A DNA stretch of 64,000 nucleotides from Thecamonas trahens ATCC 50062 (Eukaryota; Protista; Apusomonadida): positions 73,698 through 137,697 of the forward strand of contig NW_013657660.1 in NCBI RefSeq assembly GCF_000142905.1, read 5' to 3'. Of the stretch, positions 23,934 through 40,553 are shown one piece after another (position 1 is the first letter of the stretch; each line of letters opens with the position of its first letter). The position numbers and the translations under genes were made by a program. The notes beneath the pieces are model-generated. The model was not told the DNA's origin, made no database searches, and saw nothing but the letters and a program-made list of their open reading frames with translations.

Positions 23934-26723
23934 ATGAGGCTGGCTTTACCTCTCCTCACCCTCGTCCTCGTCCTCGCCCTGGCCGACGGCTTCTCCTGGT
24001 CCCACCCGCAGCTGGCGGCGACTGCGGTAGCCTCGCCCACGGTCTCTTGTGGCGAGAGCGCTTCTTCTCTGCATGCGCTGCCTCTGACCAGCCGCCAGGC
24101 TGCCGCCGCAGTCATCATCAGTCTCGAGAACGATGACTCGGCTGTTGCTCTGGGCTTGGGCATGCTGCCGAGCGTCCACGCCCGCCTCCTCTCGCCCGTG
24201 GCTGGCACTGCGGGTCTTCCCGATGCGACGCTGGCCGACTCGCAGCCGGAGCTGTGGGAGATCAACGAGCTCGCGGTGTCTGATCTGGCCTGCGCTCAGC
24301 CGCAGTTTGTCATTCCACTGCCGCGCTTGGACATTGGGTGGCTGGTGCTCACTGCGCTTGCACCGGACGTTTTCCATCCGCCTCTCCCGCTCGCCTCGAT
24401 TGTGGTGCCTGTCACTCCCATGGCTTCCAGGGTGCTCCCGGCTGCGTTGGCAGTCGATGCCGTGGCGCTGGCCAGCAAGAGCTTGCCGGCCAACGTTGCT
24501 GCTGCGCTCAACACTGTCCACTCGGACGCGCTGCTCGCCAGCCCGCATGGGGTCTGGGCCTGGTCCTCGGTCGCCGAGCCGGAGCTGGTGGTCGCCTTTC
24601 CACAGCTACCGGGCCGTCACGCCGGGTCGCTGGGCGGGGTGGCGACTTCGACCGCTGTCGGAGCATGGGCGGCCGTCACCGTCTGCCGCGTCACTCCGCC
24701 GGGCCCACTCCGCTTGGACATCCATCCTGTTCCGCGGGCCGACGACGCTCTGTTTCTCGCCACAACGCCCGGCACGCTCTACGCATTCAACTTTACATCG
24801 GGTGCGTGGACGACGCTCACGTTTCCCGCGTCTTCGGGCGGCGCGGTCGTGTCTGCGCTCTACCCGGCGCGCTCGCTTCCGTGGCACTCGCCAGACTCTG
24901 GCACCGTGTATGGCATTGCCAACGCCACCGCGGTCTTTCGGGTGGCGGCGGGGAGCATTACCGTCCTGCCGCCGCTGCCGGGCGCTGTGGCTCAGGTGGG
25001 TCATCCGATTGGGCGCGGCGACGAGCCGGTGGCGCTCCTGGACTCGGGGAGCGTGTGCTTGTGGAAGCCTTCGGCGCAACGCTGGGCGGTCTCAGCGGCG
25101 CCGATGCCCACGGCGACATGGCGGGGCCTGGTGCTGTCGGCGACCGACCCGTCGGCTGCGGCGGCGTGGGCGCCGGACCGGATTGCGGTTGTCCTCTTTA
25201 GTGCCGGCTTGAACCAGCCGCCGTTGCTTGTCGAGCGAGCGACAAGCGCGACCGCGCTCTTTGGCGAGACCATTCAAGCGCTGCTGATCGCTGACGACCA
25301 GCTGCTCGGGCAGGGAGCAAGCGGCGCTTGGCACGTCGCCCGCCTCTCTGCGCTGGAGAGCCCGGCTGCGCTGCTGTCGCAGGTCTCCGGTGTTCCGCTT
25401 GTTTATCCGCTCGTGCCGCCGCTTGTCGGATGGATGAGTGCAAACGTGAGCTCCAACGGCACGCTGGCGGCGTTGGCTCGCCAAGGCGCTTCAAGCGATA
25501 TGACATGTGCCGCAGTGTCTGCCACAGTGAGCGTCGACGAGCTCAGCAGTGGAAACCGGCGGCGGACTCTGCTCCGCGGCGGTGGCGCGTCTTTGGCAGC
25601 GTTTGCCGATGGCGACCTGCCAGAACACTCGCCGCTATATCTTGACTACGGGGAGAGACTCACGCTTCGGCTCCGCACTATGCTCACCGAGGCCGGTGCG
25701 GCGGCGGTAGCGACCCTCGGCACGAACGCGTCGCCGTTTGCGGTGGCCATCTCGCGTCAGGACGACGGCGATCACCCGCGGCTGTTGGTTGAGCCGACGG
25801 TGGTCGAGCGGCCCAACGCGACGTCACAGATGCTCGAGCTCCAGATTGTTGTGCGCGAGCCCGGGCGGAGTGCAGGCTATCCGCCGATTCAGTACGGGTC
25901 GGGCGAGTCGCTGACGGCGACGCACGTTGAAGTTGCGCTCGATGTGCCAGGGGTAGGCGGTGGGCCTGGGTGCTCGCTGAGCCGGGTCGGCGCCTCGGTT
26001 GACATGCTCGTGGGCTGCGCGCCAGGCCTCTCGCTGCAGCTCAGCGAGAGCGAGACGTTTTCCCAGAGCGAGGGCTGTCGTGAGAGCGACCCGTACCCGT
26101 GCCTCTTCTTCGAGTCTGTGTTTAGGCCTGTCATCAACGTGGTCGACGCAGTGGCCGGGACCTCGTGGCCGTACATCGGGCGGATGTACTTTCGGGTGGT
26201 GGGCGGCGGCCTGACGCCTGACAGCATCAGCCGGTTCAACGCAGACGAGGTGCTCGACAACAACCTGCACGGCTCAACAATGTGGACGTTTGACTCTGAT
26301 GGGTCGGGTGCGTCGTCGTCGGACCCCGTCATCTCCTCGTCGGCGAACGGTATCACCTTTGTGTGCTCCGGCACCTCGCCGTGCGCGGACATCCTGCCCA
26401 ATTTCCCGGACACGCCCGAGTACTACATGCTCATTGCGATCTCGACAGTGGGCATTCCCGACGACACTTACTGCGGGCTCACCACCGAGTTTGTGCTCCG
26501 GGTCCACGGCATTCCCATGAACTTTTCGACCTCGATCTCGTTTGTCTCGGCCTCGCTCCTCGCCGTCTTTATCCCCATGGTCATCGTCTACTGTGTCAAG
26601 CGCCGGGCTGGCACCCTCGACGGCGACGGCGATGGCGACGTCCACGCCAAACGCCGTGCCCTCGTCACTGGCGCCCGGCGCACCACTCCGCGGCCTCCGT
26701 CGCGTCGGGATCTGTTTGGGTGA
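23934..26723 (+). CDS. CATSPERG: Cation channel sperm-associated auxiliary subunit gamma homolog (type I membrane protein, 929 aa)
   Basis: Signal peptide and C-terminal TM helix. The C-terminal ectodomain is collinear with mammalian CATSPERG as recalled: VGCAPG (VGCPPG), PCLFFESVFRP (PCFLFRDIFYP), VVGGGLTPDSI (VVGGGPTLDSL), GITFVCSGTSPCADILP (GIEWLCLENAPCYDNVP), PEYY (PEFF), TYC..TTEFVLRVHGIP (TYC..QLTFLLHIHGLP). Confidence 0.88.
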   Translation: MRLALPLLTLVLVLALADGFSWSHPQLAATAVASPTVSCGESASSLHALPLTSRQAAAAVIISLENDDSAVALGLGMLPSVHARLLSPVAGTAGLPDATLADSQPELWEINELAVSDLACAQPQFVIPLPRLDIGWLVLTALAPDVFHPPLPLASIVVPVTPMASRVLPAALAVDAVALASKSLPANVAAALNTVHSDALLASPHGVWAWSSVAEPELVVAFPQLPGRHAGSLGGVATSTAVGAWAAVTVCRVTPPGPLRLDIHPVPRADDALFLATTPGTLYAFNFTSGAWTTLTFPASSGGAVVSALYPARSLPWHSPDSGTVYGIANATAVFRVAAGSITVLPPLPGAVAQVGHPIGRGDEPVALLDSGSVCLWKPSAQRWAVSAAPMPTATWRGLVLSATDPSAAAAWAPDRIAVVLFSAGLNQPPLLVERATSATALFGETIQALLIADDQLLGQGASGAWHVARLSALESPAALLSQVSGVPLVYPLVPPLVGWMSANVSSNGTLAALARQGASSDMTCAAVSATVSVDELSSGNRRRTLLRGGGASLAAFADGDLPEHSPLYLDYGERLTLRLRTMLTEAGAAAVATLGTNASPFAVAISRQDDGDHPRLLVEPTVVERPNATSQMLELQIVVREPGRSAGYPPIQYGSGESLTATHVEVALDVPGVGGGPGCSLSRVGASVDMLVGCAPGLSLQLSESETFSQSEGCRESDPYPCLFFESVFRPVINVVDAVAGTSWPYIGRMYFRVVGGGLTPDSISRFNADEVLDNNLHGSTMWTFDSDGSGASSSDPVISSSANGITFVCSGTSPCADILPNFPDTPEYYMLIAISTVGIPDDTYCGLTTEFVLRVHGIPMNFSTSISFVSASLLAVFIPMVIVYCVKRRAGTLDGDGDGDVHAKRRALVTGARRTTPRPPSRRDLFG

Positions 26724-26748: not shown

Positions 26749-27336
26749 TCACCCGCCATCATCAGCGTCTGCATCAGCATACACAAAGCCCATTCTCCGG
26801 TACCGTCCGCCCCGTCCCGCCACATCGGTCACAGCTTGGCTCTCACTCGCCTCGTCGACCCCACCGAGCACTCTTTCAAAGTAGTGTCCGACGCGATCGG
26901 CAGGCGAGAGCACCGTAAAGGACGAGACCAGCGTGTCCGGCAGCAAATCGGGATGCGACTGCTTGCGGGTGCTCGGCTTGGGCGAGTAGAGGATGTGAGC
27001 GCCGATGAGCTCGCGCTCCAGCGCTGTCACGATCTCGGGCACATCAGCCACAGCAGCCTCCCACACGCTCGCGGAGCAGCCGAGAAGTGTGGCCACATCG
27101 TTGTCAAACAGCAGAATCGAGTCCAGCACGTCGGATCTGCCGCTGGTCGCCACACGCAGCGAGAGCTTGAAGACGGCCACCGAATCGGTCTGGGCCAAGT
27201 CGCGCTTGCACGTCTTGCAGTAGAGGGCATGGTGGGTGGGATGGAAGCCCGAGTGGGCCTTGGAGCAGAAAGCACACACCGCGTACGTCAGCCTCCGCGT
27301 GTCGGCAGCCATCACAATGCCGCGCTTGCCCAGCAT
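26749..27336 (-). CDS. Stand-alone RPA1 C-terminal-type OB fold with zinc ribbon (DDIAS/noxin-like)
   Basis: YAVCAFCSK…YCKTCK (C4 zinc ribbon), then FKLSLRVA and LFDNDVATLLGCSA, resembling the RPA70 DBD-C and DDIAS N-terminus (YKLSLKVA…VFG…FFGLTA). ATG at 27336. Confidence 0.7.
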   Translation of the reverse strand: MLGKRGIVMAADTRRLTYAVCAFCSKAHSGFHPTHHALYCKTCKRDLAQTDSVAVFKLSLRVATSGRSDVLDSILLFDNDVATLLGCSASVWEAAVADVPEIVTALERELIGAHILYSPKPSTRKQSHPDLLPDTLVSSFTVLSPADRVGHYFERVLGGVDEASESQAVTDVAGRGGRYRRMGFVYADADADDGG

Positions 27337-27515
27337 GCTCCTGCAGCCGCTTCCTGAGCCGAGCCGAGCCGAGCCGAGTGCTCTCGCCCGACCTGCTCGA
27401 GCTCCCCCAAAGCGAGCAAGGACCACAACCGAGGTAGGCTCAGCTCAGGCACGGCGGGTGGTATGGCCACACACGGCCAGCGGCCGGCGCGACGCACTCG
27501 TATATCATTCTTCAA

Positions 27516-30241
27516 TCACTCCTCATTACTTTCATCCTCTTCTCCACCGCCATCGCCGGCAGCAAGGACCACCGACGATGACGACGATTGGAGCCAGGGG
27601 CGCGATCGGTTCTCACGGGACTGGGTCCGGGCGAGGAGGTTCTTGCGGGCTGAGCGGCGGGAGGACCGCGGCCGCGACGGGGTGTCGACAGCGACGCCAG
27701 CGGTGCCGCTCCGGGTGGCGCGGAGGACAGAGACGCCGGAGCGGCGGGTTGGCATCGGTGACTTGAGGTGCGAGACGATGGCAGGGCGGACAAAGATGCC
27801 GTGCTTGGCCGCGCAGTCAAAGTACTGCACGCCGGCGACAGAACCATCGTTGCGACCCCAGGCTTCGTCGAGTGCAACGCCGACCCACTCGCCGCGCGGA
27901 TCAAACTGGGTGTAGCCAACAAAGGCAACGGTGCCCGGCTTGCCGCGGACAGAGACTCGGTTGCCGATCCCTAACTGGACACCCTCGACCGAGACTGACG
28001 TTCCGAGCACCGCAACCTCTTTGGTGTGGCTCTGGGCCTCGACTGACGTAGCCAGATCCTCCGGCACCAGCCGCGGACGGCTCGCCGGAACCACCGAAGA
28101 CGAAGCCGACGCCGTCTCGTCGTCGGCATCGCTCGCACTCTCGGACTCTGGCTCGGACTCGGCGTCCGACTCGGAGACCGAGGTGATCTGGAGCTCGGCA
28201 GCGGCCTCATCCTCCTCGCCGAGCACGGTTGCCACAAACAGGGCCGAGATCCAAGCATACAGTCCCGCAGCGGCCTTGGAAACGTCGGCGAGAAGGTCTG
28301 GCTCAAGGTCGTTGTCGACAATGTACGGCCAGAGCGCGTCCAGCTTTTGCGGCGTCATCTCACGCTTGTAGTTGTAGGCGAGACACTTGCGGGCCAGGTT
28401 CGGGTCGCGGAGAACAGCCTCAATGTCACGCGGCAGCGCCTGTGCCGCGTGCTGAAAGGTGGCGCCGGAGCCGCGCCACGAGGTGTGCTCGTGCAGCCGC
28501 TCGCCGGCCTCGGTGTCCTTGAACAAGACCACAAGTGCCTCCATGACCTTGACGATGGGCTCGACCGGATGGACGTATGACCGCAGCTCATAGAGGTCGG
28601 CCTTGGTGAGTGCGGCCAGCTGCGCCTGCGCCGACGCATACTGCCGGCCGGCGGCCGAGTGGGCAACGAGGGCGCGCACGCGCTCGACCTGCTCGCGCCG
28701 CTCGCGGGCGGCCCAGCCCGGAAGCTCGCGGCTCCCGGCCCGGACCAGACCGCTGCGGGTGCCTTCGAGCATGACGGTGCGTCGGGCGGCGGCAGCACTG
28801 GCGGCGACCCGCATTGAGTCAGCCGGGGTCCACACACGTTTCGGGCTGGTGCGGGCGACGAGGAGGCTGGACGGGGCGCCGAGCGTGTCGCCGGATCCGC
28901 TGGCAGTCAGCGCCGCCGTGTGCTCGGCCTCGCTCACCGCCGCGCGCTCGTTGTACAGGGCGAGCAGTGCGTCGAGCTTCTCAATGACGTCCTCAGGCTG
29001 CTCCTCGCGAAGAAGCAACAGCATCTCCTCCATCTGCTCGCGCTCGAGCTCGAGGCGCGAGTAAGCGCGCGACGACTCCTCAAGCTGGGCTGCGGCCGTC
29101 TCGTACTTGGCCTTGAGGACTTCGTGCTCGGTGATGAGAGCCTCATGCTCTGCGACGGTAACCGCGTTGGACGAGGTCGAAGCGACTGACGACTTTTTGA
29201 GCTCGTTGAGCTCAAACGAGAGTAGAGCCCGCTGGCGCGCCTCCTCGTCGAGCAGGGCAGCAACTTCCTCTTCCTCGGCCACAAACGAGGTCTTGAGCTG
29301 CTCTATATCTTCGACAAGCGCCGACTGGTCGGCATCGGCCCGACGCCGCAACGCGCGCTCGCGGTGGACCATCTCCTCGGCGACCCGCAGCTCGTCCTCG
29401 AGCTCTGCAATCCGGTCGCGGAGGGTGTCCTCGGTCTCGGCCGCAGCGTCGAGCTCATGTTCGTAAGCGAGCTTGTCGTACGCCGAAAGCGAAGCGTTCT
29501 GTCGCGACTCTGTCCGCGAGTGCCGCTCGGCCCGGCGGCGCGCCGCCTTTTCTTTCTCGAGCTTGAGTGAGAGCCGCGAGATTTTGCCCTTGAGCACCTC
29601 TATCTGGTCTGTGAGCAGATCAACCTCCTCCTCCGCCCGCTCGCGCATTGCGTTGCCGTCTGCTCGTGCGCTCTCGACCGCCTGCGCCGCCGCCTCGTCG
29701 GCGGCCTGCAGCTGCGCATCGAGGTGCGAGACAAGCGCCTTGAGCGCACGCGCCTCGTACATTGCCGCTGTGGCCCGCCGCCCACTGCCGGCCTCGCTCT
29801 CACGTGTGGGTGTTTGGCCTGCCTTTCGCCGCAGGCCCCAGTCGCCGTGCTCAGGCCTCCCATGTGCCGGCTGCAGCTCATCGAACCGGACTCGTCCGGC
29901 CCACTCGCGCATGGTCCTCCGGTCCGGCGGCATCGATGCCGGCACCACCGGTTCGTTTGAGCCCATCATAGCCGATGCTCGCTCTCCTCTCCGCGTCCTG
30001 CCCTCCACCCGCGGTCGCACCAATGGCTGTGCCTTGTGCTGCTTGTACCCCCCTGCTCTTTCCCCGTCTGCGATCTGGCCATTGGCTGTGTCCTGCGCGC
30101 CGATGGCTGCGCCCCGTACGCCGATGGCTGCGCCCCGTACGCCGATGGCTGCGCCCCGTACGCCGATGGCTGCGCCCCGTACGCCGATGGCTGCGCCCCG
30201 TACGCCGATGGCGGCGGCGGCGATCTGTGCACCACCTTCAT
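27516..30241 (-). CDS. Coiled-coil + dynein-stalk microtubule-binding-domain-like + CAP-Gly protein (start 29969, or 30241 if a C6 run at 30048-30053 is one base short)
   Basis: CAP-Gly: GNRVSVRGKPGTVAFVGYTQF..GEWVGVALDEAWGRNDGSVAGVQYFDC..KHGIFVRP (~27770-27975). MTBD-like: LTKADLYELRSYVHPVEPIVKVMEALVVLF…W…DPNLARKCLAYNY…PYIVDNDLEPDLLADVSKAAAGLYAWISA (~28240-28610). Confidence 0.88.
30098..30212. repeat. 21-bp tandem repeat (cgccgatggctgcgccccgta) x5.5; reads SAYGAQP on the minus strand
   Basis: Directly visible perfect copies. Confidence 0.95.
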
Positions 30242-30303
30242 CCGATCACTACTCCCAACCGTCCGTCCGTCCAGTCCCCCCCACCACACCACCCCCCCCC
30301 CCC

Positions 30304-30403
30304 NNNNNNNNNNNNNNNNNNNNNNNNNNNNNNNNNNNNNNNNNNNNNNNNNNNNNNNNNNNNNNNNNNNNNNNNNNNNNNNNNNNNNNNNNNNNNNNNN
30401 NNN
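30304..30403. other. Assembly gap (100 N) flanked by poly-C
   Basis: N run. Confidence 1.
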
Positions 30404-30511
30404 TCCCCCCCTGCCCCCGGCCCAGAACCACTTGGCGCCAGACCACCACCACCACCACCGCACCCGCACCCTCTCCACTCCACCCACCAACCACACACAA
30501 CCACACACACT

Positions 30512-30544
<33 letters not shown>

Positions 30545-30575
30545 TACACACACACACACATACATACACATATCC

Positions 30576-33500
30576 ATGTCTGTAGAGCGGAGGCTACGGG
30601 GCCTCCTTGCCTCGCTTGCCACTATCCCCACCCCCGACCGGTCTCCTGCCTCCCTCTCCGAGCTCAACACCCTTATCACTCCCTTGCTCCTGGTCGCGCC
30701 CTCGTCTATCTCCCTCCCCCTGCCGCCCACGGGAGAGACACTGACGGCAACGGCTGCGGCGGGCAACCCGCATTCGGCTGCTGCAAACACCACTCAGGAG
30801 AAGGTCGGTGCTCTGGATGGCTTGCCTGCTGCTCGTGCTGCTCGTGCTGCTCGTGGTCCAGGTGCAGGCGGTGGAGGTAGCACGGCTGCTGCTGCTGCTG
30901 CGGCGGCGGCGGCGGCTGCTGCTGCTGCTGCCACCCATGCACTGAGGCCGAGCATTGCGTTGGATGTCTTTGTCGAGGCTGCAGGGCTGTACATCGCCTT
31001 TGGTGAGTATGCGCATGCTCAGTCATGCCTCCTCACCTACTTTCAGTCGGATCCGCCCACCAACAAGTTTCTGGCCAAGGCACACTTTCTCCAGGGCGAG
31101 CTGCTGGTTGTTCCGGCGGTGGATGAGCCCATCCATGGCGAGCGCCTTTCGCTCACCGTTTTATCGGGCCTCGCTTCGGTCGTCAAGGGCTTTGACCTTG
31201 GCCTCACCTCGCCCCGCTACCACTTTCTCCTCTACAACGGCTCGGTCTACTGGTGGCGACTCGCCCGCCCGCTTGTGGTCCCGGGCTTCCGCCACCTGCT
31301 CCTCCCCTCCGCCGCACACATCGTCGAGGGCCTCGACGCTGTTGACGAGCCCGATCTCGCCTGGCGCGCCCGCCTCATGCACCTCCTCGCCCTCTGCCAC
31401 GAGGACAACAACGACCGCGCCGCCGCCCTGCACACCCTCTCGCGCGCCGCCGCTCTCGCCGACAAGGCCGCCGCCACTGAGCGCGCCGCCATTCTCTCCA
31501 AGTCTGGCTCGCCGCCGTCGACTCCGTCGCTCGCCCGCTCGTCGTCAGCCCGCGGCCAACGCACAGGGCGGGCTGCCCGGGCCGCCACCCCACCCAAGCG
31601 TGCTGCGACCAAGCACGGCCGCCAAGATTCACCGTCGGCCACCGTCCCAGACACTCCGGTTCTCGAGCTCTGCAGGCTCATTTACCGCACCCAGATCGAG
31701 CTCTCGCCGCCGTCGGCCGCTGCCAACCTGGAAAAGTCTGCTACTTCCTCGGCCGCTTCGTCATGGCTCACGGCCTCGCCGTCGACACCCGCCGTCCTCA
31801 AGGCCCTCGCCCGCGTCGAGCTCGTCATGTCCTCGCCCGAGCCGCGCGCCAGCCTCAAGCTCCTCCACGAAGCGTTTTCTCTCCTGGTAGGCGCGCCCAT
31901 TCCGCCGCCCGCCGCACCGACCTCCGAGTGGCCGACCGTCCCGTCCTCGCTCTCGTTCCCTGGCCAGGTACTCCTCGGCGAAGTTGGTCTCCTCGCCGTC
32001 TTCTACGGCGACCTGCACGTCGGCCGTGTCGCCGCCGCCGCCGCCCACCAGTCGCGCAACCTCGGCGCCCGTATCCAATCCGAGTACTCGCTCGCCATGC
32101 TTCGTGTCGCCGACATGGGCCCGGCTCAGTTTGCCTTTTCCAAGGACATGGTTGAGACCCGCGTCGAGTCACTTCGCATGCTCGAGCAGGCGCTGCACTC
32201 GGCTACCCGCCTCGGCAACGCAGGCATCATCGAGGCCGGCGCGGTCTGCATCTGGAACCTTGTGCTGCCGCTCCTGCAACCGAACCTTCGCCACCTCGCT
32301 CATCGCCCCATGCACCTCGCCGCCACCGCTCTCGCGCGCATCTCCTCGCCGCTTCGCACCCTCATGTCTGACCTTCACACGGAGCTTGCACACTGTGAGA
32401 TTGCCGACGACATGCTCTCCAAGGCCGCCAAGCACGTCGCCAAAGGCCTGGCCGCAGACCTCGTCGACCGACATGCTTCGCGCATCCTCAACCCGCTGGC
32501 CCACAAGCTCCGCCTCCGCACCAACATCTACGATAAGGTCTCGTCGCCGCTCGACGAAGCCACCCTCCTCCATGAGCAGGCGCTTCTCACCCGCGACCCC
32601 ACCCTCGCCTCCAACATCCTCCTCTCGGCCATGCAGTGCCTCTCCGACTTTCGGCCCGACCACGACTCGCCTGACCTCCACCACACCCTAGCGCTCTGGG
32701 GCAATCTCGCAAAGACCGCCCGCGCCTCGCACCTCCATCAGGCCGCCTATGACGCCGCCAAAGCTTACCTCAAGCTCGCCGGGGAGGTCTCCTCGGCTGC
32801 GCTCGCCCGCCACGTGGCCCTCCTTCCTGAGCCGGTCACCGCCGCAGACCTTGCTCTCCCACTTGCCTCGCGCACCGCTGCGGCCCCGAGCCGCGACGCT
32901 GCACCGTCGCCGGCCTCGCCGTCGCGCTCATCGGCCCGCGCTGCTGCGGCCCTCCGCTCGGCTTCGGACGATGCCCTCCACGATTCGTCGTCACACCTCC
33001 CGATCCCGGTGAGACTCACCGCGTCAGCAACCGAGCTCGACGCCGCGTTGGCGCCTGTCCTGGTCCCGGCGCCCGAGCTCTCGCTCGCCACCTCACTCGC
33101 CACGCCGCCTCCGGCGCGCCCTGGCTCGTCGGGCCGGACACCGCAGGCTCCGAGCCAGACCGCATCGCCGGCCCGCGCCAGCTCCAAGCAGTCGGCCTCG
33201 TCCGCTGCCAGCCACTCGCCGCCTTCGGCACTGATGCCTGCGGCGAGCGTGGTCGGGCCAGCACCGCGCCCGCCGGTAACCCCAGTCGCCCGCCCGGTTA
33301 CCCTTCAGGAGGAGGACGCGCTCCGCCAGCGCGCCGCCGTCTATTGCATCCTGGTCGAGGCTGCCATCGCCCTGCTAGAGGCTTCCTTCCGAGTCACCGC
33401 CCGCGACATTCTCGCCCTCGAGGTCTCGCCTGGCGACTCGCCGTCGGCCAAGCCAGTCCTCACCGGTATTGCGTCGCGAACTGCGTCGGTCCTCGCCTCG

Positions 33501-36500
33501 GCCGACCTCACCCAGCTCGCCCGGCTTGTCACCTTCCGCGACGAGATTGTTGCTTCGCTCACCTTTGCCACCCACATCGGCATTGTGCTCGGCGACCCGG
33601 TTGTAGCCTCGAATGCCGCCATCTACCTCTGGAACCACTTTCTCCCGATTTTTGACGCCGCTGCCAAGCTCTTTTCCCGCGCCGAGTCCATCGCCCGCGA
33701 CTCGCCGCCGCCGCCGCTCGAAGCCCGCCGCATGCTCGCCTCGGTCCTCGACCCGGTCCTCGCCCTCCTCGCCAAGGACGTGCCCTACTGGGGTGGGCCG
33801 GACTCAGACCCGCCCCCGCGCCTCCCTTCACTCGCTGGCATCATGGACCCGTTTTCGAGCGCGTCGTCGGTGCTGTCGAGCCAGCCACAGGCCAGCACAC
33901 CTCACCCTACAAGCGCCACTCACTCGTCGTCCTCGCTCGACCAGCCGCCGGCGGCCGACACCCTCGGATATTCGGTCCGTGGCCTTGACCTGCTGCCTTT
34001 CCTGGCGGGCTCGACAAACACACCGCCGCAGGCTGTCGGCCTTCTCTTTGCGCAGCTGCACGTCCTCGTCCGCCCGCTCTACGTGGCCTACGCCGGGCTC
34101 GGCGTCATGACCCTCCCGTCGTCGCCGCTTGCCCGGCGCATTGCGTCGCGACCCTGGCTCCGCGCGCCCGAGCCGCGACTCTTCCACGACATCTCCAACG
34201 CTCTCGCCCATGCGCTCTTTGCCTCGGTCGGTCTTGCTGCTGCGCCGCTCGCCGACGCTCTGCCCGTCTCTCTCGCCACCTCGCTCTCTGCATTTCTTCC
34301 CGCATCCAAGACGTACGTGGACGTGGCGCGGACTCTCCTCCGCGCAAACATGCCTGTTGCCGCTGTCGAGGACGCGCAAACATTGCTCTCTTCGCTCGTT
34401 GTTGCTCGCCGGCTAGCAAGCTCCAACGAGCCGCTTGTCGACGCTCGAGCACCCAACAGTCACCCGTTGCTCCCGGTCATCGCCGCCGTCGAGACACTCA
34501 ACTACCCATCGTCGGTCGACGAGCATGCCTCGGTCCTCCGCTCGGCGCTCACGGCGCTCCACGAGGTCTCGCTCCTCGGTGGCGCCTCGGGCCCGCCCGG
34601 CCTCGACACGTCGGCAGCAAGCATCGCGCCATCACCCAGTGGCGGGCGGCCCAAGTCGCGGGCAGCGAGCTCGCCTAGTCCTGGTCCGCCGCGCGGCCCC
34701 GCACCGCTCCCGCCGCCCGCGCTGGTGGGTCAGCTCTACGTCCGCGCCGCCCGTGCCGCTCTTGACCTCACAGCCTATCCGATTTCCCTCCTTGCTGCCC
34801 GGCGTGGCCTGGTGCTTCTGCTGGGCAGCGACGGCGCACCGGCGCTCGTCGCGCTCGCCCATATGGTCATGGGCGAGGCCACGCTTGGCCTCATCTCACC
34901 ACGCCATCGGCTGTCGCGGCAGAATCGGGCGCGGACCTTTGCGCTCGAGCAGTTTGTGGCCGCTGCGAGGCTCGGCAAGGCCCACGCCAACCTTGACACG
35001 GTCCTCACCGCCGCCACACACTTTTGGAACCTTGTGCCGGCCTTTGTCACCTCGCTCTCGCTTGTCCGGGTCCTTCTCCCGCAGCTTCAGGAGGTCATCA
35101 ACTCGCTCCTTGCCTTTGACCGCAGCATCGCGTCGTTGCAGCTAGTTGTCTCACTCTTTCGCCTCTCGTTTGAGTGCTACGCCCGGCTCGGGATGTGGGA
35201 CGACGGACTCTCGGCCGTCGCCGTCTACCTCTCAACTGTCTCGGTCAAGTTCCACGACCTCATCTGGCGCGAGCGCATTCTTTTCAAGTCCAAGTCTGGC
35301 AAGGACTTGCGGCCAGAACTCTCCAAGATCATCGACCTCGATCCAACCATTCAGGCCCAGATCTGGCTGACCCTCGCGCGGGCGGCCTCGCAGCCTGCCG
35401 CCCGCATGGCCGCTTACCACAAGGCCATTGAGGTCTTTGAGCGAGAGCCGTGGCGCAAGGTCGACATCTTGGTCGAGTTTGCTCAGTTTCTGTACGAGAC
35501 GCACGCGGACGGCCTCGATATCACTGACGTGCTGGAGGAGGCGGCCGACCTCTTGCTCGACTTGGTCTCTGACGAGCAGCGTGCGCGACGCAACTCGGTG
35601 GCAGAGCTGCATCTGTTCCGACTCGGCTCGAGTGGCGCCAAGTCCGAGAGCCAGCAAGCCCGCGTTCCACCCAAGCTCTCGGCCTCGCAGCTCGAGATCC
35701 TCGGCCGCATCCACACTATGCTCCACATTGTGAGCACCGATGCCGCCGCCGCTGTCGACTTTGCGCTCATGGCGCAGCACTTTTTCGAGCAGCTCTATGC
35801 CGCCGCCGCCGACCACGCCCGCGCGCTCCTCGAGGCCCTCGTTGCCGCCTACCCGCAGCTTGCCCCATCCGACTCGGCCGACCGCGTCGAGGCTGCCGAG
35901 TCGGAGCCGCCCAAGGAAAAGGCAAAGGCCAAGTCAAAGGACAAGGACAAGGAGCGCGAAAAGACAAAGGCAAAGGCTCGCAACTCCCGCCGTGCTGCCC
36001 TCGAAGCCACGGCGTCGACCTCGTCGTTTGCGCCCGACGCCACTGCAGCCGCAGCCGCTTCGGAAGCCTACGACGCACTTTGCACAGCGCTCGACAAGTT
36101 TGGACTTCCCGACTCGGTCTACGGTTGGCTCACCGCGCCGCTCGCCAGTGAGTTTGCAGATGCGCTCACTGCCGCCGCCGCGGTCCTCGCTGACGTGGGC
36201 TCTGCCCCCGGGGGTGCGAGCGGCCTGGCTGCCGGCGACTCGCTCGTCTCGCTCGACGAGGCCGCCACCGCTGCCGACGGCAACAGCGCCGCCTCGCCAG
36301 CAGACGCCTCCGCGCACGCTGCGCTGCCTATTGCTGCGCCGCAGCTGACGTTGTACTACATCAACGCGCTCATCGAGTTTCTGGAGCAGGCTGGATACTC
36401 GTTCCACGTGCTCCCGCTCATCCATCTCGTCCACCTCCTCGGCTCTGTTGCTGGCGAGTCGCGGGCGTACCTGCAGTGGAACCGCCAGCGGCTTGCCAAG

Positions 36501-39500
36501 CAGCTGGAGACGCTCAATCTCGCAGACCTTGCCGCCGATCTCCGGATCCGGCCGGTGCAGCTCGCACTCGACAACGCAGTCAAGATGGAGCACGCCGACG
36601 TCATCCACCAGGAGCGCGAGCTCCGCAAGTTTGCCGAGACCCGCCCATTGCACTCGGTCCTCAAGTCGTCGAGCCGCAAGACGGGAGACGTCGTCAGCGC
36701 TAGCACAAACCGCACGCTCCTTGAGCTCGAGCCGGTCACGCCGATGCGGTCGGTGTGGGTGCTCAAGGGCGACTCGCTTGCCAGCGATGGTGCGTACGAC
36801 CTTGCGGTCCCGCTCTACAACGCTGCCCTCGATCACGCTCGCGCCTTTGGGGACGAGCTTGTGCTTGGGCTCGCCTACAATGGGCTTGCCCGCGTTGCCC
36901 TCGCCCGTGCCCGCATCCTCGGCACCTGCGGCTCGGGCCCAAACGCCCGGACCCAGCTCAAGACTGCCGACAAGGAAGACGGCGTCGCCTCCGACTTTAT
37001 CGACCAGGGTATCGAGTACGCGATGCTTGCTCGCGGCACGGCTGGTACAGCCAAGTTCTGGCTGGACAACTCGACGCTGCTGGCAGACTTGCTATGCGAG
37101 GCCGCCCCGTCGCCGCGGTTTGCCGAAGCGCTCGCCATTCTCGGCGAGACCGTCGACATCCTCACCGAGGCCTCACGGGGCGTCCAAGCCGGAAAGGCCC
37201 TCCTTGACACCGCCATTGCGCTTGTCCGCCGGCACGAGGGCAGAGTCCACCTCGCCGCTGCGCTCACTGCCGACTCGGGCTCGCCAGACCCGGCCCGGCT
37301 CGATGCTGCACTTGCCGCCTTTGACGACGCAGTTGTCCTGCTCAAGGCGCTCGGCGGTGCGCATGCGCTCCTCGCACACACGCTTGTCGAGTATGCGCAG
37401 GTGCTGCAGCTCAAGTCGGGGACGAGCCTTGGCCAGTTTGAGGCCGTTGGCAAGGTGCTGGAGGAGGCCGAGGCTCAGGCAGCGGCGTGGTACGCCGCGG
37501 TCTCGGTCCAGGCCAGCGGTCCGCTCGCGGTCCGGGTCTCGCTCCCGGCCGCCCGCGCGCTGGCCGAGCTCAAGCTCGCTCTCGGCAAGACGCTCGTGTC
37601 CATTGTCGGCCTTCGCCCATCGCCCGAAGACGCGTACGCCGACTTTCCGACGGTGGTCGCAAAGTACTTGCTTGAGACGATGGAGCTCGAGACGCCCGAG
37701 CAGATCCTGCCGGCCCAGGAGCGGGCACTCATCCACATGTCGTCGGCATACAACCTGGCGCCGGTCCCGGGCCTCGCCTCGCGCGCTGCTCTCTGCCTCG
37801 GTCGCACCCTACTTGACATTGCTGTCCGCCGCGGCTACCTCATCCTTCAGTGGGGCGAGCCCGAGTCGGACGACGACGACGAGTCGGATCTCGACCGCTC
37901 GAGCTCGAACTCGTCAGCTGACGAGAGCGAAGAGCAGTCTGATGACGGCGACGGCGACGGCGACGACGACGATGCTGATGACGACGAAGATGACGACAAC
38001 GACGACGAAGGCGACGAAGGCGACGATGGCGACGACGACGACAATGACGACGACGATGACGACGATCCTGTCGACAGCAATGGCCGCCGCGTGGTACGTA
38101 AGATGGACGCGTCGATTCGTGTCCTCGCTCGCGAGCAGGAACACCTGTACCTGGTCGACCAGGCCGCTCAGTACCTCAAGCTTGCCGTGGTGGGCGCGCT
38201 GGCGGCGGAAGCATGGGAGGTTGCGCGCGAGGCGTGCCTCCACCTTGTGCATCTGCATGGCGTGCTTGATCCGGAGGCGTGTGCCCTGTTTTGCCTCCTC
38301 GCGCAGTGCGTCGAGGTGCGGATGCAGGCCGAAGAGCTTGTAGTGGCAGCTGCCGACGTCCGCGACCCGAACGCGATGCTGCTGCGGCAGCGGCAGGAAC
38401 AGCGGAAGCACTCGCTGATCGGCACTGTTCCGCCGCTGGCCGAGCACGATGCAGTCGCGGCCGCACTTGGGCGGCAGAGCGAGTCGTGGCGGGCGCTAGA
38501 GCTCTCGGTCGAGAACCTTGATTTGTTTGGGCCGCCGGCCAATGCTCTGGCGCGGATGCTAGAGCCGCTCGGCAACAGCTTGCTCGTTGTGGCGCATGTC
38601 GGCTCGCTCGACGGCGTTTGGCTGTACTCGGTGGTCGCCGCCGCCGGCGGCGGCTCGCGGGCGAGGGTGGTGCGGAGCAAGCGGAGCGGCGCGCAGCTGT
38701 TGGCGGCCGAAAAGGCATGTGCCGCGCTCGACTTACATCTGCGGCGTGGCCTTCTCAAGGAAGACAACGAGTTCCACCTGGCTACGCCCGGTCCGGCTCA
38801 GAGCGAGGCAGCGGCCGCGCCCGAGCCGGTAGCCAAGTCCTCGGGTGCATCGGGCTCGGCGCGGGGCTCGGGCTCCTCGCGAAGCCGTCGGTCGCGGACA
38901 AGCGCACCCAGTGCGGCAGCGGACAAGGGCGAGAAAGCGCCTGCCGCTGCAGTTGTGGACCCGATCAAGGTTGTGCGGGCGATGGCAAGCGGCCGGGTAA
39001 GCAACCCGCAGGCGTCCGCCGACGAAAAGGCGTGGAGCGAGCTGCTTGACGCGCTCAACGCGTGGTCACTGGAGAGCGGTCTTGTGGCTGCCGTCCACGA
39101 GGCGTGCGTCCATCGGACGTGTTCGACGTTTGAGAGCGTGGTAGTGTTGGCGCCCGAGGCGCTGTCGATGCTGCCATGGGAGGCGTTGGCGGTGTTTAGC
39201 GCGCTCCCGCTCCTCTGCGACGAGGTGGCGGCACTCGGTACCGTCGGCGTTGCACGCGAGTTCTCGGTCGGGCTCTTGCTCGCGGCGCTGAGGTCGCCGA
39301 TCCTCGGCGCAGAGGTCGAGACCAGCGCCGGAGCTGGGCTAACGACAGGATCATCAGGATCGCGGCGGAGCGGCAGTGTGGCGGGCGGGCCGCGAGGGAG
39401 TGTCGACAAAAACTCGGTGACGTATGTTGTCGACCCACTCAACGAGCACCACGTACACGAGGCCTTGCTGCCCGCTGCCGCGCGTGACTCGAGTCCGCCA

Positions 39501-40225
39501 GCAGTACCGGCGGCGACGCCCAAGTCGGCCGTGCCGCCGCGGCTGGCCGGGATGCGGGCAGCGTCACGGGCTGTGTCGCGGGCGGGCGAGAGCGGCAGCA
39601 GCGGCGGGTGGACTGACGTGGCGATGACAGTCATGTGCGACGGCTGGCGCGAGGCTTTGGCGAGCCACGGGCAGACGACGCGGGCGTGGTCCGGCGTCCT
39701 CGGCGATGAAGCCGGTGTCGGCGTCGAGCAGTGGCAGAGACTGCTGGTGCAACACGCCGATGGCGCGTTTGTCTACTCGGGCCTTGGCAGTATGTTCTCG
39801 TACCTACCGCTGTCGGCAGTGCTCTCACTCAACCTCTCATCGCTCCATGCGGCCATCCTGCTCGACCAGGTCCGAACCGAAGAGTCGCTTCTCCGCGAGC
39901 GGCAGGCGCTGCTGCGGACAGCAAAGGCAGCTGAGCGGCGCGCTCTCAAGTCGCCGTACCTCGCTGCACTCGCACTGCGCATCACCGGCATCTCGTGCGT
40001 TGTCACCAACGCGCGGAGCACGGCGTACCCGCCAACCACGCTCTCCTCGTCTCGCTCCTCCGCTCGCTACCATCGCGTCCGCTCGCCCGGGTCCTTGCCG
40101 ACTTTCGCGCCCTCGCCCGCAGCGGGGCCAAGGCCGGCACCCCCAACGAGGATCCCCGGAGCTGGAAGGCGGCGCTGCTCCACAGCGCTGTGGTGTATGG
40201 CTGGGCCGGCTGGGGCTGGAAGTGA
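30576..40225 (+). CDS. CFAP46: Cilia- and flagella-associated protein 46 (central-pair C1d projection, TTC40), ~3,200 aa, apparent frameshift at ~40029
   Basis: The N-terminus matches CFAP46: DVFVEAA…SCLLTYF…NKFLAKAH…PRYHFLLYNGSVYWWRLARPLVVPGFRHLLLPS…EPDLAWRARLM, and IIEAGAVCIWNLVLPLLQPNLR. TPR-like helices follow. The C-terminus LPWEAL…VAREFS…YVVDP continues in the -1 frame (ANHALLVSLL…AVVYGWAGWGWK*). Confidence 0.9.
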
Positions 40226-40553
40226 TGACAGAGAAAGCAACAAGCCATTGTGTACCCACGACTTGTTATGCAAGCCCATCATGCGATGGACATAAAGCGC
40301 GCATCATGCTCCAATCCGGGAAGGTGATGCCCGGGCAGAGTGCTGGCAAGGCTGGCGTGGCTCGACGTGTCACTCGCCCAATCGATCCCGGGCGACCTTC
40401 TCCCCCCCCTCCCCACCCCCTTCCTTCTCCAGACCCTCCGCCTCCCTCCCCTCACTGCACCAACCAGGCTACCACCCACTTCCACCCCCTCCACCCCGCA
40501 CAAGCCTCATCTCCAGCCACTCCACCCCCACCCCCCAACCCCCACCCCCCACC

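What the first reader, a model, noticed from the sequence alone, without database searches (positions are those of the whole stretch)
27516..30241. Motor-less fusion of a dynein-stalk microtubule-binding domain with a CAP-Gly domain and a dimerising coiled coil
Seen in sequence: a long coiled coil, then a ~125-aa segment following the dynein heavy-chain stalk MTBD pattern (L.KADL.ELRS..HP…V..VMEAL.VL…W…L.DPNL…L.YN…PY..D.D..PD.L..VSKAA.GL..W..A), an acidic linker, a CAP-Gly domain (GRNDG in place of GKNDG) and a basic Ser/Arg tail. Established: the MTBD normally sits inside an AAA+ dynein whose stalk registry sets its affinity, and CAP-Gly binds tubulin/EB EEY tails in p150Glued and CLIP-170. 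Inference: a motor-less MAP or cross-linker that combines the dynein foot with the dynactin-type tubulin-tail reader. It could tether or bundle microtubule roots or compete with dyneins for lattice sites. I do not recognise this architecture from any characterised protein.
Basis: partly seen in the sequence, partly recalled or inferred. Interest (0 to 1): 0.8.

Follow-up and report, generated by a model that had tools for sequence, protein, structure and literature searches.

The report
Motor-less dynein foot fused to CAP-Gly
A single-exon gene of a GC-rich flagellate encodes a protein that joins the microtubule-binding "foot" of dynein, without any motor, to a CAP-Gly tubulin-tail reader; no other protein with this combination turned up in the searches run.

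Summary
The minus-strand ORF 27516-30023 (public model 748 aa, starting at 29762) scores above Pfam's cut-offs for CAP_GLY (E 7e-22) and for the dynein stalk family MT (28.6 bits, cut-off 24). The MT match covers only the MTBD part of that profile. An AlphaFold model of the segment (pLDDT 84) matches solved dynein MTBDs at Z 13.5-16.6. The best non-dynein chain scores 11.1 and unrelated folds score under 5.

No AAA+ module is present. The stalk is a stub of about 32 residues per strand, and both stalk-boundary prolines of dyneins are missing.

Upstream lie about 290 helical, heptad-biased residues. Downstream lie an acidic Ser-rich linker, a CAP-Gly with GRNDG, and a Ser/Arg tail.

An exhaustive HMMER search found no second MTBD+CAP-Gly protein. 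It did find uncharacterised motor-less proteins carrying 2-9 tandem MTBDs in other protists. This genome also holds about 45 CAP-Gly genes.

The most likely reading is a lineage-specific static microtubule-associated protein or cross-linker. Microtubule binding, dimerisation and expression are untested.

The parts
27516..29762 (-). Gene as in the public model P0001 (748 aa plus stop): one exon, no stop codon, no N
   Evidence: GC3 is 0.74-0.83 in every part, like the neighbouring genes (0.78-0.79).
29763..30023 (-). In-frame upstream stretch (87 codons; TTG at 30023, ATGs at 29969 and 29912); a possible but unproven N-terminal extension
   Evidence: GC2 is 0.655, so it looks less coding-like.
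28896..29759 (-). Long helical, E/A/L/R-rich N-terminal region (P0001 residues 2-289); probable coiled coil
   Evidence: The AF2 single-sequence model gives helices 2-85, 94-192, 201-251 and 257-289 with pLDDT up to 94. The heptad score is about 2.4 SD above shuffles.
28716..28895 (-). Ala/Arg/Ser/Gly-rich, low-confidence connector
28614..28715 (-). CC1-like helix of a short stalk stub (ORF residues 437-470). The conserved CC1 proline is replaced by Arg.
   Evidence: AF2 helix 8-41 of the segment. The proline column is P in 11 of 12 own dyneins and R here.
28278..28604 (-). Dynein-type microtubule-binding domain, helices H1-H6 (ORF residues 474-582), with a disordered insert of about 20 residues after the conserved Trp of H3
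   Evidence: PF12777 above its cut-off; alignment A1; AF2; Foldseek and VIA-align; ESM Atlas
28182..28277 (-). H6 continuing into a CC2-like helix of the stalk stub (ORF residues 583-614). There is no CC2 proline and no further return helix.
   Evidence: AF2 helix 154-185. The CC2 proline is present in 12 of 12 own dyneins and absent here.
27969..28181 (-). Acidic, Ser/Glu/Asp-rich disordered linker
27780..27968 (-). CAP-Gly domain (GRNDG motif)
   Evidence: PF01302 E 7.4e-22; E about 1e-17 to CLIP-170 and p150Glued CAP-Gly structures
27519..27779 (-). Basic Ser/Arg-rich tail that ends in an acidic EEDESNEE

Best explanation
This is a real, lineage-restricted gene for a non-motor microtubule-associated protein. 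Its order is: about 290 residues of probable coiled coil, a flexible connector, a dynein-type MTBD on an antiparallel stalk stub of about 32 residues per strand, an acidic Ser-rich linker of about 70 residues, a CAP-Gly domain and a basic Ser/Arg tail.

Proposed mechanism (inferred, not shown):
- The CAP-Gly domain reads the C-terminal -EEY of alpha-tubulin.
- The basic tail binds the acidic tubulin tails.
- The MTBD sits in the intradimer groove of the lattice.
- With no AAA+ ring, and with both stalk prolines lost, the MTBD's affinity cannot be cycled, so it would act as a fixed foot.
- Several weak sites on one chain, doubled if the coiled coil dimerises, would give a high-avidity static tether or cross-linker of microtubules. 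A flagellar or root-associated role is possible.

Shown here: the domain identities, their order in one open frame, the absence of a motor, and the MTBD fold. Inferred: all binding, dimerisation and cellular role.
For: - Domains: Pfam hits for both domains lie above their curated cut-offs, and no AAA or dynactin family matches.
- Fold: the model has pLDDT 83.9, and dynein MTBDs score Z 13.5-16.6 against 11.1 for the best non-dynein chain and under 5 for unrelated folds. The ESM Atlas model agrees independently.
- Signature residues: the family positions E50, P57, W87, S153, A155 and W162 of the segment are kept.
- CAP-Gly: it is 50-60% identical to CLIP-170 and p150 CAP-Gly domains in the local alignments. 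GRNDG also occurs in paralogues L023 (GRNDG) and L024 (GRNSG).
- Ligand: the genome's alpha-tubulin ends VEEY and its beta-tubulin ends EPEY, while its single EB1 match ends EAVEA.
- One gene: the frame is continuous with uniformly high GC3, and the public gene model carries both domains.
- Loss of the motor's switch: both stalk-boundary prolines, called universally conserved in PMC6629372, are absent.
- N-terminus: long confident helices and a heptad bias.
- Context: CFAP46 lies head-to-head about 1 kb away.
Against: - The MTBD is very divergent. It scores at most 20 bits against any of the genome's own dynein MTBDs and sits on a long, unplaced branch.
- Its core carries a net charge of -4, at the acidic end of the own-dynein range of -6 to +6.
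- A disordered insert of about 20 residues follows the H3 tryptophan.
- The position two before the H6 serine, K or R in most dyneins of alignment A1, is Asp here.
- There are no orthologues, so purifying selection cannot be tested. No expression data were available.
- The AF2 model was built from an alignment of dynein MTBDs, which may bias it towards that fold.
- Dimerisation rests only on helix and heptad predictions.
- Gene neighbourhood means little in eukaryotes.
Confidence: 0.6

Rival explanations
1. The MTBD-like module is a decayed relic that no longer binds the lattice. It would serve only as a helical spacer or as a protein-protein interaction bundle. The protein would then be just one more coiled-coil CAP-Gly protein among the roughly 45 in this genome, binding microtubules only through the CAP-Gly domain and the basic tail.
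For: - The Pfam score is low (28.6 bits) and the match to own dyneins is at most 20 bits.
- The core has a net charge of -4.
- There is an insert in H3-H4, and Asp sits at a position that is usually basic before H6.
- The branch is long.
- The genome has a massive CAP-Gly expansion with varied partners.
Against: - The fold and the family-wide signature residues are retained.
- One bona fide dynein of the same genome is even more acidic (L006, net -6) and several lack the basic residue before H6.
- Other lineages keep MTBDs in motor-less proteins in many copies, which argues that the isolated module is useful.
Confidence: 0.25
2. The protein is a regulator or competitor of dyneins rather than a structural MAP. 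It would occupy dynein's lattice site, or it would use the MTBD-stub to bind a dynein accessory protein (for example an LC1-type light chain that docks on outer-arm MTBDs), while the CAP-Gly domain targets it to tyrosinated microtubules.
For: - The model superposes closely on the LC1-bound outer-arm MTBD (6l4p_B: rmsd 2.4 over 127 residues, Z 13.9).
- The same binding site is implied by the same fold.
- A flagellar gene (CFAP46) lies next door.
Against: Nothing tested here speaks directly for a partner or for competition.
Confidence: 0.1
3. The fusion is an artefact: two genes, a pseudogene or an assembly join read through in a GC-rich genome, where long open frames arise easily.
For: - Many spurious overlapping ORFs occur in this 65% GC window.
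- By my own estimate, an 80-codon linker would stay open by chance in roughly 1 case in 8 at this base composition.
- There are no orthologues.
Against: - There is no stop after the MTBD in frame, so an upstream gene could not terminate.
- The ORF holds no N, and the gap lies outside it at 30303-30402.
- GC3 is 0.79 and GC2 is 0.53 in the linker, as in coding sequence.
- The independent public gene model contains both domains.
Confidence: 0.05

Closest known systems
Dynein heavy chain stalk/MTBD (Pfam PF12777; structures 3ERR, 6RZA, 6RZB, 8I3J)
   Same: It has a six-helix MTBD with the family signature on an antiparallel helical pair. Matches reach Z 13.5-16.6.
   Different: There is no AAA+ ring, linker or tail. 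The stalk is about 32 residues per strand, so the match covers only profile positions 91-204 of 344. Both stalk-boundary prolines are lost. There is an extra insert after the H3 Trp, and the sequence is highly divergent.
CLIP-170 / CLIP-115 and dynactin p150Glued (CAP-Gly plus basic/Ser-rich region plus coiled coil)
   Same: It has a CAP-Gly domain (E about 1e-17) followed by a basic Ser-rich stretch, combined with a long coiled coil. The logic of a tubulin -EEY tail reader is the same.
   Different: The order is reversed: coiled coil at the N-terminus and a single CAP-Gly near the C-terminus. There are no CLIP1 zinc knuckles and no Dynactin domain. An MTBD is added, and the motif is GRNDG instead of GKNDG.
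Uncharacterised motor-less tandem-MTBD proteins of other protists (e.g. P0036 with 9 units, P0002/P0035 with 5 units, P0024 from MMETSP, P0006 from Diphylleia rotans)
   Same: They carry dynein-type MTBDs without AAA+ domains, on short stubs that mostly lack the stalk prolines.
   Different: They carry 2-9 MTBD units and no CAP-Gly. A subset shares its own conserved N-terminal domain, which is unrelated to this protein's N-terminus. No supported tree link to the window's MTBD was found.
[quoted passage not shown]
   Same: It is a dynein derivative reused as a non-motile part.
   Different: DNAHX keeps the whole heavy chain, and according to the paper's headings the insertions in its stalk-MTBD disrupt microtubule binding. 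Here only the MTBD survives.
Engineered SRS-MTBD fusions used for structure work (3ERR; PMC6629372)
   Same: An MTBD on a stalk segment fused to a foreign protein is an autonomous microtubule-binding unit. Its affinity is fixed by the chosen registry.
   Different: Those constructs are artificial, and their registry is set by design. Here it is a natural gene of unknown registry.

Membership tests
Pfam MT (PF12777, dynein stalk/MTBD) | Score above the curated gathering cut-off | tested here: met
   28.6 bits against 24; E 9.2e-7; covers only profile positions 91-204 of 344. The six-frame genome search gives 30.9 bits.
Pfam MT (PF12777, dynein stalk/MTBD) | Six-helix MTBD fold on an antiparallel helical pair | tested here: met
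   AF2 pLDDT 83.9. Z is 16.6, 16.0 and 15.6 to 8i3j, 3err and 6rza. The ESM Atlas model gives TM 0.64-0.68.
Dynein heavy chain | AAA+ ring (AAA_8/AAA_9 and others) flanking a full-length stalk | tested here: not met
   No AAA family matches at E <= 1 in the 835-aa ORF. Flanking ORFs are unrelated genes.
Dynein heavy chain | The two conserved prolines that delimit the MTBD from CC1 and CC2 (PMC6629372) | tested here: not met
   The CC1 proline is Arg here and P in 11 of 12 own dyneins. The CC2 proline is absent here and present in 12 of 12.
CAP-Gly (PF01302) | Score above the cut-off and a GKNDG-type motif with the aromatic pocket residues | tested here: met
   77.5 bits against 26.5. GRNDG and the F, W, Y/F and F-x-R positions align with CLIP-170. 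The roles of these residues come from general knowledge of the family.
CLIP-170 family | N-terminal tandem CAP-Gly domains, CLIP1 coiled-coil family, C-terminal zinc knuckles and an ETF tail | tested here: not met
   There is a single, C-terminal CAP-Gly and no PF27241 or PF16641 hit. The protein ends in ...ESNEE.
Dynactin p150Glued | Dynactin domain (PF12455) after an N-terminal CAP-Gly | tested here: not met
   No such Pfam hit.
Motor-less tandem-MTBD proteins (uncharacterised) | Two or more MTBD units per chain; a shared N-terminal domain in a subset | tested here: not met
   There is one unit only. phmmer finds no similarity of the N- or C-terminal parts to any of them.
Microtubule-associated protein (functional class) | Direct binding to microtubules | not testable with these tools

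The most novel reading that the evidence does not exclude
The dynein MTBD is a mobile, autonomous microtubule-binding module that evolution has repeatedly taken out of the motor. It appears once here, fused to a CAP-Gly tail reader, and elsewhere as arrays of 2-9 MTBDs. Together these would define an unrecognised class of static, dynein-footprint MAPs. Loss of the stalk prolines would mark release from the motor's registry switch.
Probability: 0.45. Interest if true: 0.75.

Novelty: new variant of a known kind. Interest (0 to 1): 0.6.

Why it matters
The dynein MTBD is treated as a part whose affinity exists to be switched by an AAA+ ring through the stalk. A natural protein that keeps only the foot, on a stub without the hinge prolines, would show two things: that the foot works as a stand-alone lattice binder, and which registry or affinity state evolution freezes.

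Coupling the foot to a CAP-Gly domain would give a MAP that reads both the lattice groove and the tyrosination state of the tubulin tail.

The tandem-MTBD proteins found in passing suggest a wider unstudied MAP class in protists. These proteins could compete with dyneins for their binding site. They could also serve as natural probes for that site.

Tried and rejected
- Word-indexed homology searches with the whole protein, the MTBD region and the CAP-Gly region returned only the protein itself or ordinary CAP-Gly proteins. These searches are limited by word sharing and by the length window.
- The look-up of encoding contigs held no record for P0001.
- Complex prediction (beta-tubulin, the second exon of alpha-tubulin, and the MTBD) was unavailable, so no binding prediction exists.
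- The MTBD phylogeny used 97 units and 128 columns. The window's MTBD sits on a 1.6-long branch with no starred clade. Its weak grouping with the P0002 and P0036 units (SH-aLRT 83) may be long-branch attraction. An axonemal or a cytoplasmic origin therefore stays unresolved.
- Single-sequence AF2 of the whole protein was uninformative beyond the N-terminal helices; even the CAP-Gly domain had pLDDT under 50.
- Five literature searches found no paper on motor-less MTBD proteins or on an MTBD+CAP-Gly architecture. The library lacks most subscription journals.
- The structural match to a radial-spoke chain (7jtk_C, Z 11.1) was taken as a generic helical hairpin and not followed.

Full report
**What is in the sequence**

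The window is about 65% GC throughout. It carries long intron-poor eukaryotic ORFs.

The finding corresponds to a minus-strand open frame with its stop at 27516-27518. The first start codon after the preceding stop is a TTG at 30023 (835 aa). In-frame ATGs lie at 29969 and 29912. The public gene model for this sequence (P0001, 748 aa) begins at MYEARALK, nucleotide 29762.

It is in a different frame, which stops at 29966, so it is not part of this ORF unless an undocumented intron joins the two.

The ORF holds no N. The assembly gap lies outside it, at 30303-30402. GC3 is 0.74-0.83 in every segment, including the linker between the two domains. The neighbouring genes have GC3 of 0.78-0.79.

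**Domain identities**

Pfam reports CAP_GLY (PF01302, E 7.4e-22, 77.5 bits, ORF residues 686-748). It also reports MT, the dynein stalk family (PF12777, E 9.2e-7, 28.6 bits against a curated cut-off of 24). The MT match covers ORF residues 462-593 and only profile positions 91-204 of 344, which is the MTBD itself. Nothing else is credible, and no AAA, Dynactin or CLIP1 families match.

Against PDB sequences the CAP-Gly domain matches CLIP-170, CLIP-115 and p150Glued at E about 1e-17. The MTBD region gives weak matches (E 0.01-0.1) to axonemal heavy chains.

The alignment with 19 dynein MTBDs shows the family signature: L.K.D..E.RS...P, VMEA, W, L.D, the FD/YN-K block, DP.F/L.P and S.AA..L..W. 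The nearly invariant positions E50, P57, W87, S153, A155 and W162 of the segment are kept.

**Fold**

The 186-residue segment window:28179-28736:- was modelled with that alignment. The model has pLDDT 83.9 and pTM 0.77.

- It shows a 34-residue helix (CC1-like), then the small helices of the MTBD, then a 32-residue terminal helix (H6 plus CC2-like).
- Residues 84-98 form a disordered loop.
- All leading Foldseek hits are dynein MTBD or stalk structures.
- VIA-align gives Z 16.6 (8i3j, DNAH1), 16.0 (3err), 15.8 (5ayh), 15.6 (6rza, DNAH7 on microtubules) and 13.5 (6rzb).
- The best non-dynein chain scores 11.1, and unrelated helical proteins score under 5.

My alignment consisted of dynein MTBDs, so the model could be biased towards that fold. 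The ESM Atlas's own single-sequence model is independent of it. That model matches dynein-stalk clusters at TM 0.64-0.68 over residues 366-528, and the feature search gives MT-family clusters at 0.90-0.92. I consider the MTBD assignment established.

**How it differs from a dynein MTBD**

- There is no motor.
- The stalk is a stub of about 32 residues per strand.
- The two prolines that delimit the MTBD from CC1 and CC2 are described as universally conserved in PMC6629372. Both are gone. The CC1 position is Arg here, against P in 11 of 12 dyneins of the same genome. No proline follows H6, although 12 of 12 own dyneins have one.
- The domain is very divergent. It scores at most 20 bits to any of the genome's dynein MTBDs.
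- Its core net charge is -4, inside but at the acidic end of the own-dynein range of -6 to +6.
- It has an insert of about 20 residues after the H3 tryptophan.
- It has Asp at a position before H6 that is K or R in most dyneins.

These points leave real doubt about how well it binds the lattice.

**The rest of the protein**

P0001 residues 2-289 are predicted as four long helices with pLDDT up to 94. This region is 18% Glu, 18% Ala and 13% Leu. Its heptad score is about 2.4 SD above shuffles. That fits a coiled coil, but dimerisation is not shown.

The linker is Ser/Glu/Asp-rich. The tail after the CAP-Gly domain has 17 Ser and 13 Arg in 88 residues and ends in EEDESNEE.

The likely CAP-Gly ligand exists in this genome. 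Alpha-tubulin ends VEEY and beta-tubulin ends EPEY. The single EB1-domain match ends ...DEAVEA, without an aromatic residue. Tubulin tails are therefore the likelier target than EB1. This is an inference, because a further EB1 exon cannot be excluded.

**Relatives and novelty**

An exhaustive HMMER search of 1.84 billion representative proteins with the MTBD segment gave 33 other hits at E <= 1e-3, all 120-1277 aa long.

- None contains a CAP-Gly domain (phmmer).
- Some are plain fragments of heavy chains with AAA_8 or AAA_9 (P0019, P0025, P0026). The best single-domain scores go to the single-MTBD hits: P0010 (44.9 bits; no AAA domain found, but a PF12777 E of 1e-101), then P0019 (38.1 bits) and P0023 (37.8 bits, not scanned against Pfam).
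- Many hits are motor-less proteins with 2-9 complete MTBD units about 115-175 residues apart.
- Several of these are complete genes. P0036 (1568 aa, 9 units) and P0035 (746 aa, 5 units) are single ORFs flanked by unrelated genes on contigs of 1.36 Mb and 0.68 Mb.
- P0024 is a complete MMETSP ORF. P0006 comes from Diphylleia rotans. P0018 recurs in five data sets.
- A subset shares a conserved N-terminal domain that is unrelated to this protein.
- Most units also lack the stalk prolines.

The tree does not place the window's MTBD with support, so its dynein class of origin is unresolved.

Within its own genome this is the only non-dynein MT-family locus. CAP-Gly, by contrast, gives 75 matches in about 45 genes. 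This copy is 43-64% identical to 20 of them. The nearest, at 64%, shares a one-residue insertion. GRNDG recurs in paralogue L023, and L024 has GRNSG.

The ESM Atlas has no cluster with the combined architecture. Five literature searches found nothing on motor-less MTBDs or on this fusion. An InterPro architecture listing, which I could not consult, would be the decisive check.

**Context**

CFAP46 (PF25439, E 1e-12) is divergently oriented about 1 kb upstream. A CatSper-gamma homologue (PF22846, E 7e-26) lies a little further downstream. This hints at a flagellar neighbourhood, but gene order is weak evidence in eukaryotes.

**Verdict**

The best reading (0.6) is a lineage-specific static MAP or cross-linker with up to three microtubule-binding elements per chain. 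Its dynein foot has been released from the motor's affinity switch.

The main rival (0.25) is that the foot is a decayed relic and that only the CAP-Gly domain and the basic tail bind. Binding, dimerisation, expression and localisation are all untested. The complex predictor was unavailable.

I rate it a new variant of a known kind. It gains interest from the wider motor-less MTBD proteins that came to light with it.

Noticed in passing
P0036 (L014:2001-6707), P0035/P0002 (L015:2001-4241), P0003, P0004, P0009, P0013, P0015, P0018, P0024, P0029, P0006: These are uncharacterised motor-less proteins of other protists that carry 2-9 tandem dynein-type MTBD units (P0036 has nine units with a period of about 173 aa). 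They have no AAA domains. One has an Hmw_CFAP97 N-terminus, and a subset shares a conserved N-terminal domain. Orthologous unit positions cluster across proteins in the tree. No literature on them was found.
   Followed up: partly
G000 genome-wide, e.g. C9:207782-207979, C22:212696-212881, C5:285117-285308: A 28.7-Mb genome holds 75 CAP-Gly matches in about 45 genes, many with two or three domains. From memory, this is several times the human repertoire. It suggests rampant CAP-Gly domain shuffling in this lineage.
   Followed up: partly
L040:1501-1650 (G000:C3:577244-577393): The only EB1-domain match in the genome ends ...DDVEDEAVEA, with no C-terminal aromatic residue. The usual EEY/F ligand for CAP-Gly domains therefore seems missing from EB1 here, unless a further exon exists.
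   Followed up: partly
L016:762-2108 (-) and L017:876-2210 (-): Beta-tubulin is intronless and ends ...GDYEPEY, an EY end like that of alpha-tubulin, which ends ...DYVEEY. Alpha-tubulin has an intron after about 30 codons. Both tails could be CAP-Gly ligands.
   Followed up: no
window 30048-30600: The intergenic region between this gene and CFAP46 holds five or six copies of a 21-bp repeat, G-rich and (CA/TG)n runs, and a 100-N gap at 30303-30402. The repeat's SAYGAQP reading frame is not in frame with the MTBD-CAP-Gly ORF.
   Followed up: partly
window 30036-40295 (+) and 23934-26723 (+): The neighbours are a CFAP46 homologue (PF25439 TPR_CFAP46_N, E 1e-12) and a CatSper-gamma homologue (PF22846, E 7e-26). 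The 225-aa ORF at 26749-27426 (-) has no Pfam hit.
   Followed up: partly
AF2 model me88dbcbecc3e against PDB 7jtk_C: A Chlamydomonas radial-spoke 1 chain (residues 434-599) aligns to the MTBD-stub model at Z 11.1 over 163 residues. It is the only non-dynein chain well above background. It may be a generic helical hairpin or an unnoticed MTBD-like module.
   Followed up: no
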